From: Octopus sinensis
Lineage: Eukaryota
Reading direction: 5' to 3'
NCBI RefSeq assembly: GCF_006345805.1
Contig: NC_043015.1
Span: forward strand, 52,080,001 to 52,144,000
DNA: 64,000 nucleotides
Shown: positions 53,303 to 53,747 of the stretch, one piece after another
Layout of the letters: each line of letters begins with the position of its first letter
Position numbering within the stretch: the first letter of the stretch is position 1
Notes under the pieces: model-generated
The model's database searches: none
Seen by the model: only the letters and a program-made list of their open reading frames with translations
What the model was told of the DNA's origin: nothing
Made by a program: the position numbers and the translations under genes

Positions 53303-53747
53303 GAATGATTTTTTATATGGCGCCGTTTTTACAATCCTGTAAATAATAATAATGGAAAATTTATGTATGCTTAAAGCTTATAGCAATCACGAAGGAAAAT
53401 AGTCTAATAAAGGCCATAAAAAAAGGAGACTTTCTTATCCGCGTTGGAATCGAACCTCCATCCCTTTGTTAACGCGACTAAGTGTGTTACCATTATACCA
53501 GCGAATTCTTTTCCTGTCAAGCCGTTATTATTATTTACAAGATTATAAAAACGGTGCCGTATAAAACAAAAAAGAGCATTAAGGTAAAGGTAACACACTT
53601 AGTCGTGTTAACAAAGGGATGTGTGTTCGACTCCCACGCGGATAGGAAAGCCTTCTTTTTTCTATCGAGGGCTTATATGCCCCTTTATTAGACTATTTTC
53701 CTTCGTCATTGCACGGTGATCGCCATAAGCTTTCAGCTTACATAAAT
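53303..53747. other. Inverted pair of tRNA-like units in circularly permuted order
   Basis: Arm 53359-53500 is the reverse complement of 53583-53747; 53303-53355 is the reverse complement of the spacer 53522-53580; B-boxes ggttcgattcc (minus, 53446-53456) and gttcgactcc (plus, 53625-53634). Confidence 0.8.

What the first reader, a model, noticed from the sequence alone, without database searches (positions are those of the whole stretch)
53303..53747. Divergent, circularly permuted pair of tRNA-like units forming a large fold-back
Seen: the right unit on + reads X (53522-53580), tRNA-like head (ggtaaaggtaacacacttagtcgtgttaacaaagggatgtgtgttcgactcccacgcggat), T6 run, body (to 53747). The left unit on - reads head (gctggtataatggtaacacacttagtcgcgttaacaaagggatggaggttcgattccaacgcggat), T run, body, X (53355-53303), then cattcgc, which resembles the start of another head. 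One copy is therefore X-head-body and the other head-body-X, inverted, and the whole is bounded by (TA)n. Both heads have a B-box-like motif and a downstream oligo-T, and the left head has a clear A-box-like motif. The family occurs nowhere else in the window. Inference: both derive from a tandem-multimeric or circular monomer of about 230 nt, inserted with an inversion (twin-priming-like or PLE-like), or from a tandem array of Pol III mini-genes. Divergent short Pol III RNAs and a hairpin of about 140 bp are possible outputs.
Basis: partly seen in the sequence, partly recalled or inferred. Interest (0 to 1): 0.7.

Follow-up and report, generated by a model that had tools for sequence, protein, structure and literature searches.

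The report
Inverted pair of old octopus SINE copies
Two decayed copies of a tRNA-derived short interspersed repeat (SINE) of octopus genomes lie head-to-head between two (TA)n microsatellites, one of them just after the tail of a further copy, which is an ordinary arrangement in this repeat-rich genome.

Summary
53297-53753 holds two related units in opposite orientation: 85.8% identity over head plus body, and a 77-nt core that is 87% complementary. Each unit has a tRNA-like head, a T6/T7 run about 11 nt after it, and a body. The 45-nt module X lies after the left body but before the right head.

The window is octopus DNA. The family is absent from the rest of the window. Two more independent copies lie at one locus of O. 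vulgaris and O. sinensis. There the order is head, T5, body, (ATT)n, X. The head is at the 5' end, X is not upstream of either copy, and one copy has a candidate 14-nt target duplication.

So X is the 3' module of a linear SINE-like element. The apparent circular permutation comes from a head-to-tail junction (tail of one copy, then the next head) beside a copy in the opposite orientation. This 64-kb window also has five head-to-tail dimers and at least six inverted pairs of other repeat families.

No circle, PLE or Pol III mini-gene array is needed, but a short tandem precursor followed by an inverted duplication is not excluded. One oddity remains: the conserved T-run should stop Pol III before the body. 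Interest is low.

The parts
53207..53296 (.). Left flank: (TA)n-rich microsatellite abutting the 3' end of the left unit
   Evidence: TRF period 2, 45 copies; sequence read
53297..53306 (-). 10 nt after the left X (ATTCGCACCG on the minus strand). It is either the eroded 3' terminus of the element or the first 6 nt of a further head.
   Evidence: Shares ATTCGC with head positions 2-7; weak (274/3000 shuffles). Copies A and R have CATT at the same place.
53307..53355 (-). X of the left unit, the 3' module of the element: (ATT)4, TACAGGATTGTAAAAACGGCGCC, ATATAAAAAATC
   Evidence: 45-nt arm 89% complementary to 53522-53566. Same module follows the body in O. vulgaris copy A.
53356..53417 (-). Body of the left unit, with two deletions (14 and 12 nt) relative to R and A
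   Evidence: 4-copy alignment
53418..53424 (-). T7 run (A7 on the plus strand) 10 nt after the tRNA-like head; Pol III terminator-like
   Evidence: Sequence. A T5-T7 run is at the same place in all four copies.
53435..53507 (-). Left tRNA-like head with intact A box (TGGTATAATGG) and B box (GGTTCGATTCC); 6 of 7 acceptor pairs
   Evidence: Rfam tRNA 18.8 bits, model positions 1-71, below the gathering score of 29; ARAGORN only at -ps90
53508..53521 (.). Centre of the inversion (cttttcctgtcaag). Read on the minus strand, with the base on either side (53508-53522 = GCTTGACAGGAAAAG), it resembles the start of X (TTTACAGGA...AAA).
   Evidence: Local alignment; 40/2000 shuffles reach the score
53522..53577 (+). 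X of the right arm: tail fragment lying directly upstream of the right head (head-to-tail junction), ending in the A-rich AAAACAAAAAAGAGC
   Evidence: nhmmer profile positions 194-238
53578..53645 (+). Right head: first ~15 nt degenerate, or belonging to the 3' end of the preceding tail; from GGTAACACAC onward 87% like the left head; B box with one mismatch
   Evidence: no tRNA call
53656..53661 (+). T6 run 10 nt after the right head
   Evidence: Sequence; alignment
53662..53753 (+). Body of the right unit. It keeps the two segments deleted in the left unit and stops at ACATAAATATAACG, where (TA)n replaces the expected (ATT)n-X.
53754..53803 (.). Right flank: (TA)25 microsatellite
   Evidence: TRF

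Best explanation
The stretch is a relic cluster of an old tRNA-derived, SINE-like repeat family of octopus genomes.

The linear unit is about 230-260 nt, in this order: a tRNA-like head with A and B boxes; a T5-T7 run about 10 nt after the head; a body; (ATT)n; the module TACAGRAYTGTAAAAA...; and an A-rich end.

The left unit (minus strand, 53507 down to about 53297) is an almost complete copy. On the plus strand, a 5'-truncated tail fragment (X, 53522-53577) is followed head-to-tail by a second copy (53578-53753). The tail of that second copy has been replaced by a (TA)n array.

The 'circular permutation' is therefore a tandem junction next to an oppositely oriented copy.

Shown: family membership, the unit order in other copies, and the inverted and tandem geometry.

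Inferred:
- The copies arrived by LINE-mediated retroposition into an AT-rich/(TA)n target. A-rich tails attract further insertions.
- They are now neutral DNA.
- The only likely activity is passive. If the stretch lies in a longer transcript, it would fold into an imperfect hairpin of about 150 bp, the kind of double-stranded RNA that ADAR hyper-edits in octopus.
- The left head might still give a short Pol III transcript of about 90 nt ending at the T7 run.
For: The window is octopus DNA:
- Its mariner relic matches annotated O. bimaculoides and O. vulgaris proteins.
- Its repeats are 86-95% identical to O. vulgaris and O. sinensis loci.

The family exists elsewhere. Copies A and B lie in O. 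vulgaris OX597837.1 and in the orthologous O. sinensis locus, 66-75% identical to L and R.
- Copy A reads head, T5, body, (ATT)7, X, A-rich end. It has a candidate 14-nt TSD TTTGTT..CAAAAA (12/14; 62/3000 shuffles).
- Copy B has an intact head (Rfam tRNA 15.6 bits). It is preceded by another SINE's (GAT)n tail, not by X.

A rough 4-copy consensus gives a perfect 5-bp T stem and an ARAGORN pseudo-tRNA at -ps95.

Base rate: the same window has five head-to-tail dimers of other repeats (29253, 30744, 37124, 50974, 59631) and at least six inverted pairs within 3 kb. O. vulgaris locus L002 has a SINE-derived array with steps of about 173 bp.

L and R differ by 14% plus two indels, so the structure is old.

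Hairpin: -205 kcal/mol, z = -18.8. Octopus has an exceptionally high load of such dsRNA-forming loci and of hyper-editing (PMC5625713, read).
Against: - Only two independent outside copies were reachable, so the 5' and 3' ends of the family are poorly defined.
- A conserved T5-T7 run right after the head should terminate Pol III before the body and X. This does not fit a classical Pol III-transcribed SINE.
- The right copy lacks its 3' part, whereas target-primed reverse transcription normally keeps 3' ends. Here loss to the (TA)n array must be assumed.
- L and R are closer to each other (85.8%) than to A or B.
- Both heads are preceded by an A-rich stretch.
- The 15 nt upstream of the left head look like a remnant of X (p about 0.02).

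The last three points fit one DNA-level inverted duplication of a tandem piece at least as well as separate insertions.

No partner LINE tail was found in about 450 kb of octopus DNA.
Confidence: 0.6

Rival explanations
1. Same repeat family, but the arrangement arose in one DNA-level event. A short head-to-tail array (X-head-body-X-head...) was duplicated in inverted orientation, by fold-back or template switching at replication or by break repair. This gave a palindrome whose axis lies at 53508-53521. Later a deletion removed most of the inner X of the left arm, and (TA)n expansion trimmed the outer ends.
For: - Both arms read outward in the same order: A-rich end of X, head, body.
- L and R are each other's closest relatives (85.8% against 66-75% to A and B).
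- The 15-mer upstream of the left head resembles the start of X (40/2000 shuffles).
- ATTCGC follows the left X.
- Tandem SINE-derived arrays exist in octopus.
Against: - The identity comparison crosses species, so L and R may simply belong to one subfamily.
- The two statistical hints are post hoc and weak (p about 0.02 and 0.09).
- The arms differ by 14% plus two indels, so nothing dates them to one event.
- No longer array of this family was seen anywhere.
Confidence: 0.22
2. The unit is not a SINE but a miniature LTR retrotransposon with a Pol III promoter in its LTR (TRIMp3, Helenus-like). Head plus body would be the LTR and X the internal part with a polypurine tract. The pieces would then be L = LTR-internal-(LTR start) and R = internal-LTR, both from a tandem LTR-internal-LTR array.
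For: - The order head-body-X-head fits LTR-internal-LTR.
- An A/G-rich tract (AAAACAAAAAAGAG) lies just before the right head.
- Helenus elements carry tRNA-like LTRs, occur in Mollusca (bivalves), and some form tandem arrays (PMC10886601).
- A terminator inside the repeated part is a feature of Cassandra.
Against: - The putative LTR has no TG...CA ends.
- There is no primer-binding site after the body, where (ATT)n sits instead. The only TGGCGCC motif is on the opposite strand, in one copy only.
- Copy A's candidate TSD is 14 nt, not 4-5 nt.
- The sequence after A's X is not head-like.
- Six family k-mers are absent from the Helenus/Ajax consensus file.
Confidence: 0.07
3. A tandem array of working Pol III mini-genes. 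Each unit would be an upstream element (X, with TATAAAA), a tRNA-like gene, an oligo-T terminator and a spacer, making short tRNA-like RNAs in both directions.
For: - The T5-T7 run sits where a tRNA gene's own terminator would be, in all four copies.
- The left head has intact A and B boxes.
- TATAAAA lies 7-20 nt upstream of the head junctions in L and R.
Against: - The heads are sub-threshold tRNA matches (18.8 and 15.6 bits against 29), and R and A get no call.
- The heads fold no better than shuffles (z from -1.2 to +0.4).
- The boxes are degenerate in three of four copies.
- TATAAAA is absent in copy A.
- Copies diverge by 14-34% with indels, as neutral DNA does.
- At most 1.3 units are ever adjacent.
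Confidence: 0.05
4. Reinsertion of a circular or rolling-circle monomer (eccDNA, Helitron-borne or PLE-like), giving copies with permuted ends.
For: - The permuted order of the two units in the window.
- The left boundary reads A|TC..., as at a Helitron 5' end.
Against: - A simple head-to-tail junction explains the permutation.
- Copies A and B are not permuted.
- The right boundary is ...AACG, with no CTRR end or subterminal hairpin.
- No reverse-transcriptase, Rep or PLE sequence adjoins the stretch.
Confidence: 0.03

Closest known systems
tRNA-derived SINEs of cephalopods (octopus OK, OR1, OR2 of Ohshima and Okada 1994; Ceph-SINEs of squids)
   Same: A tRNA-like head with A and B boxes at the 5' end, a non-tRNA body, and a simple-repeat plus A-rich 3' part. 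Copies are dispersed in several octopus species, and one has a candidate TSD.
   Different: The sequences of the named families were not available, so identity with any of them is untested. This family keeps a T5-T7 run right after the head, which classical SINEs avoid. No CORE-like or other conserved central domain was recognised, and no partner LINE tail was found.
Inverted Alu pairs (IRAlus) and other inverted SINE pairs that form dsRNA
   Same: Two related SINE copies in opposite orientation within a few hundred bases, predicted to fold into a long imperfect hairpin. Such pairs are the main ADAR hyper-editing substrates, and octopus is rich in them (PMC5625713).
   Different: There is no evidence that this stretch is transcribed. 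The arms are only 86% alike, with indels.
Helenus / Cassandra (TRIMp3: miniature LTR retrotransposons with a tRNA- or 5S-derived Pol III promoter in the LTR; PMC10886601)
   Same: A tRNA-like module repeated on both sides of a short internal piece, a purine-rich tract before the downstream repeat, occurrence in molluscs, and a tendency to form tandem arrays.
   Different: No TG...CA termini, no PBS, a candidate TSD of 14 nt, and no second full repeat in copy A. No similarity to the published consensus sequences by k-mer look-up.
Head-to-tail SINE dimers and SINE-derived tandem arrays
   Same: The X-to-head junction. The same window has five such dimers of other families, and O. vulgaris has an array with steps of about 173 bp.
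   Different: Here at most 1.3 units are adjacent, and the piece is paired with an inverted partner.

Membership tests
tRNA-derived SINE (SINE2) | 5' head derived from a tRNA, with internal A and B boxes | tested here: met
   Full-length tRNA-model alignments at the equivalent place in two independent copies (L 18.8 bits, B 15.6 bits; both below the gathering score of 29). A box intact in L and B. B box with 0-2 mismatches in all four copies. The consensus gives a perfect T stem.
tRNA-derived SINE (SINE2) | Dispersed copies at unrelated loci, with a fixed 5' end at the head | tested here: inconclusive
   Two independent loci only: the window, and OX597837.1 with its O. sinensis orthologue. B starts at the head. 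A is degenerate at its 5' end.
tRNA-derived SINE (SINE2) | Variable-length target-site duplications | tested here: inconclusive
   Copy A: 12/14 match TTTGTT..CAAAAA, 62/3000 shuffles. B: none found. L and R: not assessable because both flanks are (TA)n.
tRNA-derived SINE (SINE2) | 3' tail that is A-rich, a simple repeat, or shared with a partner LINE | tested here: inconclusive
   (ATT)n plus an A-rich end are present. No LINE with the X module was found in the window or in about 450 kb of octopus loci.
tRNA-derived SINE (SINE2) | Whole unit transcribable by Pol III (no strong internal oligo-T terminator) | tested here: not met
   A T5-T7 run lies about 10 nt after the head in all four copies.
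Functional tRNA gene or tRNA gene array | Passes tRNA covariance and cloverleaf criteria | tested here: not met
   ARAGORN at default settings finds 0 genes in the window. Rfam scores are below the gathering score. The heads fold no better than shuffles.
TRIM / Helenus (TRIMp3) | Two LTRs ending TG...CA, flanking a PBS and a PPT, with a 4-5 bp TSD | tested here: not met
   No TG...CA ends. (ATT)n sits where a PBS should be. A purine-rich tract is present before the head. The candidate TSD is 14 nt. No second full repeat follows A's X. No k-mer match to Data S1 of PMC10886601.
MITE / foldback DNA transposon | Terminal inverted repeats present in every copy, with a fixed short TSD | tested here: not met
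   Copies A and B occur singly, both on one strand, without an inverted partner of the family. A TA duplication cannot be judged inside (TA)n.
Satellite / tandem array | Several consecutive head-to-tail units | tested here: not met
   At most about 1.3 units are adjacent. TRF reports no array with a period of 200-260 at the site.
Named octopus SINE families OK, OR1, OR2 | Sequence identity to the published consensus | not testable with these tools
   Their sequences are not in the held literature. Papers only name them. A sequence-string search of papers found nothing relevant.

The most novel reading that the evidence does not exclude
The family is not a classical SINE. It would be a cephalopod element whose repeated module is a tRNA gene copied together with its own Pol III terminator. 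It would spread as multimeric pieces (X-head-body-X...), either as a TRIMp3-like miniature retrotransposon or through tandem or circular DNA intermediates. The permuted, inverted locus would then be a typical product of it.
Probability: 0.1. Interest if true: 0.5.

Novelty: new member of a known kind. Interest (0 to 1): 0.18.

Why it matters
The finding matters little on its own, because it is a decayed repeat cluster in non-coding, microsatellite-rich DNA.

It does illustrate how head-to-tail and inverted SINE arrangements can mimic circular permutation. It also adds one more predicted long hairpin to a genome known for heavy A-to-I hyper-editing.

The one point worth a specialist's look is the conserved oligo-T run directly after the tRNA-like head. 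If it holds across the family, the element cannot be mobilised from an ordinary internal-promoter Pol III transcript. Its mode of spread (read-through, Pol II, or DNA-level) would then be an open question.

Tried and rejected
- Exact-pattern scan of metagenome contigs with the conserved head 25-mer: 0 hits.
- Searching the protein collection with the open antisense frame of the head, hoping for spurious ORF calls on other copies: no candidates.
- Exact look-up of the window's mariner ORF to locate the source genome: not on record.
- ENA contigs that carry the closest mariner relatives (L006-L008) are not octopus and hold no family copy.
- The paralogous CARD-gene loci L004 and L005 and the O. 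sinensis locus L009 added only duplicates or orthologues of copies A and B, no new independent copy.
- A head-like start after X in copy A: rejected by shuffling (2619/3000).
- Helitron reading: the left end fits A|TC, but the right end lacks CTRR and a hairpin. Rejected.
- TRIM/Helenus reading: no TG..CA ends and no PBS. Rejected as membership and kept as a low-probability rival.
- Rfam microRNA-family hits over the region (mir-297, MIR4208 and others, all far below gathering scores) reflect the (TA)n arrays and the hairpin, not homology.
- I could not find a host gene or exon in the window to anchor an orthologous locus. ORFs of 45 aa or more are low-complexity or transposon relics.
- I did not use the single representative-protein search, because a 30-50-aa peptide could not reach significance against that library.

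Full report
**What is there.** I read 52900-54200. The stretch 53297-53753 lies between two (TA)n arrays, 53207-53296 and 53754-53803.

Read on the minus strand from 53507 downward, the left unit consists of:
- a 73-nt tRNA-like head (53507-53435);
- 10 nt, then a T7 run (53424-53418);
- a body (53417-53356);
- module X (53355-53307: (ATT)4, TACAGGATTGTAAAAACGGCGCC, ATATAAAAAATC);
- ATTCGCACCG (53306-53297).

Read on the plus strand, the right arm consists of:
- X (53522-53577);
- a head (53578-53645);
- a T6 run (53656-53661);
- a body (53662-53753).

**Strength of the repeat.** The inverted repeat is far beyond chance.
- The core is 77 nt at 87% complementarity.
- The gapped self-match on the opposite strand runs over 53359-53747, with E 5e-49.
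- The X arms are 45 nt at 89%, with E 5e-11.
- The right arm aligns across the junction of an artificial left+left dimer, so the permuted order is real.
- Over gap-free head and body columns, L and R are 85.8% identical.
- L carries two deletions (14 and 12 nt) relative to R.
- Nothing else in the 64-kb window belongs to the family, by blastn with word size 7 or by an nhmmer profile.

**The heads.**
- The left head aligns to the whole Rfam tRNA model at 18.8 bits, below the gathering score of 29.
- ARAGORN finds no tRNA in the window at default settings. It calls the left head only at a relaxed threshold, with 6 of 7 acceptor pairs.
- The left head has the A box TGGTATAATGG and the B box GGTTCGATTCC.
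- The right head keeps the B box with one mismatch. Its first ~15 nt are degenerate, and no tool calls it.
- As single RNAs the heads fold no better than shuffles (z = -0.7, +0.4 and -1.2).

**Where the window comes from.**
- GC content is 34.6%, and TRF returns 127 rows.
- A mariner relic at about 15981-17118 matches annotated proteins of Octopus bimaculoides and O. vulgaris.
- The window's repeats match O. vulgaris and O. sinensis loci at 86-95% identity.
- It is an octopus-lineage genome. I could not determine the species.
- I found no host exon. ORFs of 45 aa or more are low-complexity or transposon relics.

**Relatives elsewhere.** The direct routes failed:
- a metagenome scan with the head 25-mer;
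- a protein search with the open antisense frame.

I then fetched octopus DNA around proteins returned by the homology searches. This came to about 226 kb of O. vulgaris OX597837.1 (L002-L005), 74 kb of O. sinensis (L009) and 20 kb of O. bimaculoides (L001).

One locus holds two family copies on the same strand, about 650 bp apart, with an unrelated SINE between them.
- They recur at 95-100% identity in three paralogous segments of a CARD-gene cluster in O. vulgaris, and once in O. sinensis.
- They therefore count as two independent copies.

Copy A:
- It reads (degenerate head)-T5-body-(ATT)7-ACTCACAGAACTGTAAAAATCAATGCTGCTTAACAAAAACC, followed by 25 nt.
- A 12/14 repeat of the sequence just upstream of it (TTTGTTCTCAAAAA / TTTGTTTACAAAAA) follows. 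62 of 3000 shuffles reach that score.

Copy B:
- It has an intact head (A box TAGTGTAATGG; Rfam tRNA 15.6 bits).
- It is preceded by the (GAT)n tail of another SINE, not by X.
- It ends at (ATT)2TACAGAA, followed by (TA)4.

Family-wide points:
- In the 4-copy alignment, a T5-T7 run sits at the same place in all copies, and R shares with A the two segments missing in L.
- Identities to A and B are 66-75%.
- A rough consensus gives a perfect GTGGG/CCCAC T stem and an ARAGORN pseudo-tRNA at 95% stringency.

**Reading.**
- X is the 3' module of a linear element: head, body, (ATT)n, X, A-rich end.
- The left unit is an almost full copy.
- The right arm is a tail fragment followed head-to-tail by a second copy, whose own tail is replaced by (TA)n.
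- This explains the permutation without a circle.

Such arrangements are ordinary here. The window contains five head-to-tail dimers of other repeats (29253-29699 at 100%, 30744-31190, 37124-37379, 50974-51432, 59631-59933). It also contains at least six inverted pairs within 3 kb. O. vulgaris L002 has a SINE-derived array with steps of about 173 bp.

**What remains open.**

First, it is unclear whether the inverted arrangement came from separate insertions or from one inverted duplication of a short tandem piece. Hints for the single event:
- Both arms begin with an A-rich stretch before the head.
- The 15 nt upstream of the left head resemble the start of X (40/2000 shuffles).
- ATTCGC follows the left X (274/3000 shuffles).
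- L and R are each other's nearest relatives.

These hints are weak and post hoc, and the comparison with A and B crosses species. In copy A the sequence after X is not head-like (2619/3000 shuffles).

Second, the conserved oligo-T run about 10 nt after the head is where a tRNA gene's own terminator would lie. It should stop Pol III before the body and X. From general knowledge of Pol III termination, this does not fit a classical SINE. It suggests the founder was copied from a tRNA gene with its 3' flank, or is mobilised from read-through or Pol II transcripts.

**Rival families considered.** The structural alternative I examined most closely is a miniature LTR retrotransposon with a tRNA-like Pol III promoter in its LTR (Helenus, TRIMp3). 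These occur in bivalve molluscs and can form tandem arrays (PMC10886601).
- The order head-body-X-head and the purine-rich tract before the head fit.
- There are no TG...CA ends and no primer-binding site after the body.
- The candidate TSD is 14 nt rather than 4-5 nt.
- Six family k-mers are absent from that paper's consensus file.

A working tRNA-like gene array is unlikely, given the sub-threshold and unevenly decayed heads and the neutral-looking divergence. A Helitron, PLE or circle origin has no support beyond the permutation.

**Likely consequence.** The whole stretch folds as a long imperfect hairpin: -205 kcal/mol, against -95 +/- 5.8 for shuffles, z = -18.8. The head and body arms pair. 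The two X modules cannot both join a nested fold, because X of the right arm lies in the loop. If the locus is inside a longer transcript, this is the type of structure that ADAR hyper-edits. Octopus stands out for both such structures and such editing (PMC5625713). I have no expression data, so this is inference.

**Verdict.**
The circular or multimeric monomer and the Pol III mini-gene array are not needed, and the linear monomeric copies found elsewhere argue against them.
- It is a new, or at least here unnamed, member of a known kind. Interest is low.

Noticed in passing
window 29253-29699: A perfect (100% identical) tandem duplication of a 215-bp unit that contains the common octopus tRNA-derived SINE in reverse orientation. 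It is flanked by (CA)n/(TA)n and looks very recent.
   Followed up: partly
window 30744-31190; 37124-37379; 50974-51432; 59631-59933: Four more head-to-tail dimers of other repeat families (80-96% identity between units; in one pair an (ATA)17 array separates the units). Head-to-tail repeat dimers seem unusually frequent in this genome.
   Followed up: partly
L002 14884-15809 (O. vulgaris OX597837.1): An array of at least five units with steps of about 173 bp, derived from the common octopus SINE. The step is shorter than the full element, so it is a SINE-derived mini-satellite.
   Followed up: no
window 15981-17118: A Mos1-type mariner relic. It is 86% identical to copies in O. vulgaris and O. 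sinensis. It is also 78-80% identical over 0.5-1.1 kb to contigs of two ENA assemblies (ERZ25070786, ERZ22157276) that share nothing else with the window, including the repeats it shares with octopus loci. Its closest protein hits are from Limulus. This may reflect horizontal spread of the mariner.
   Followed up: partly
L003 38242-38288 and 39430-39476 (also L004, L005, L009): Family copies A and B, and the unrelated SINE between them, lie inside a ~1.2-kb segment bounded by inverted repeats. The arms are 47-58 nt at 83%, and up to ~129 nt at 76% in the paralogues. Copy A's candidate TSD lies within one arm, so an older foldback or MITE-like element was probably the target.
   Followed up: partly
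L003-L005 versus L009: The CARD-domain gene segment that carries copies A and B is present four times within ~226 kb in O. vulgaris (95-100% identical). It appears only once in the 74-kb O. sinensis locus fetched. This is either a lineage-specific segmental duplication or an assembly collapse.
   Followed up: no
window 17729-18243, 18994-19281, 20160-20725: Very long trinucleotide arrays, (TTA)~170, (GAT)~96 and (GAT)~188, clustered within 3 kb.
   Followed up: no
window 3301-3642 and 62280-63336: Reverse-transcriptase and 3'-end fragments of LINE-like elements (decayed ORFs). Neither shares sequence with module X of the family studied.
   Followed up: partly
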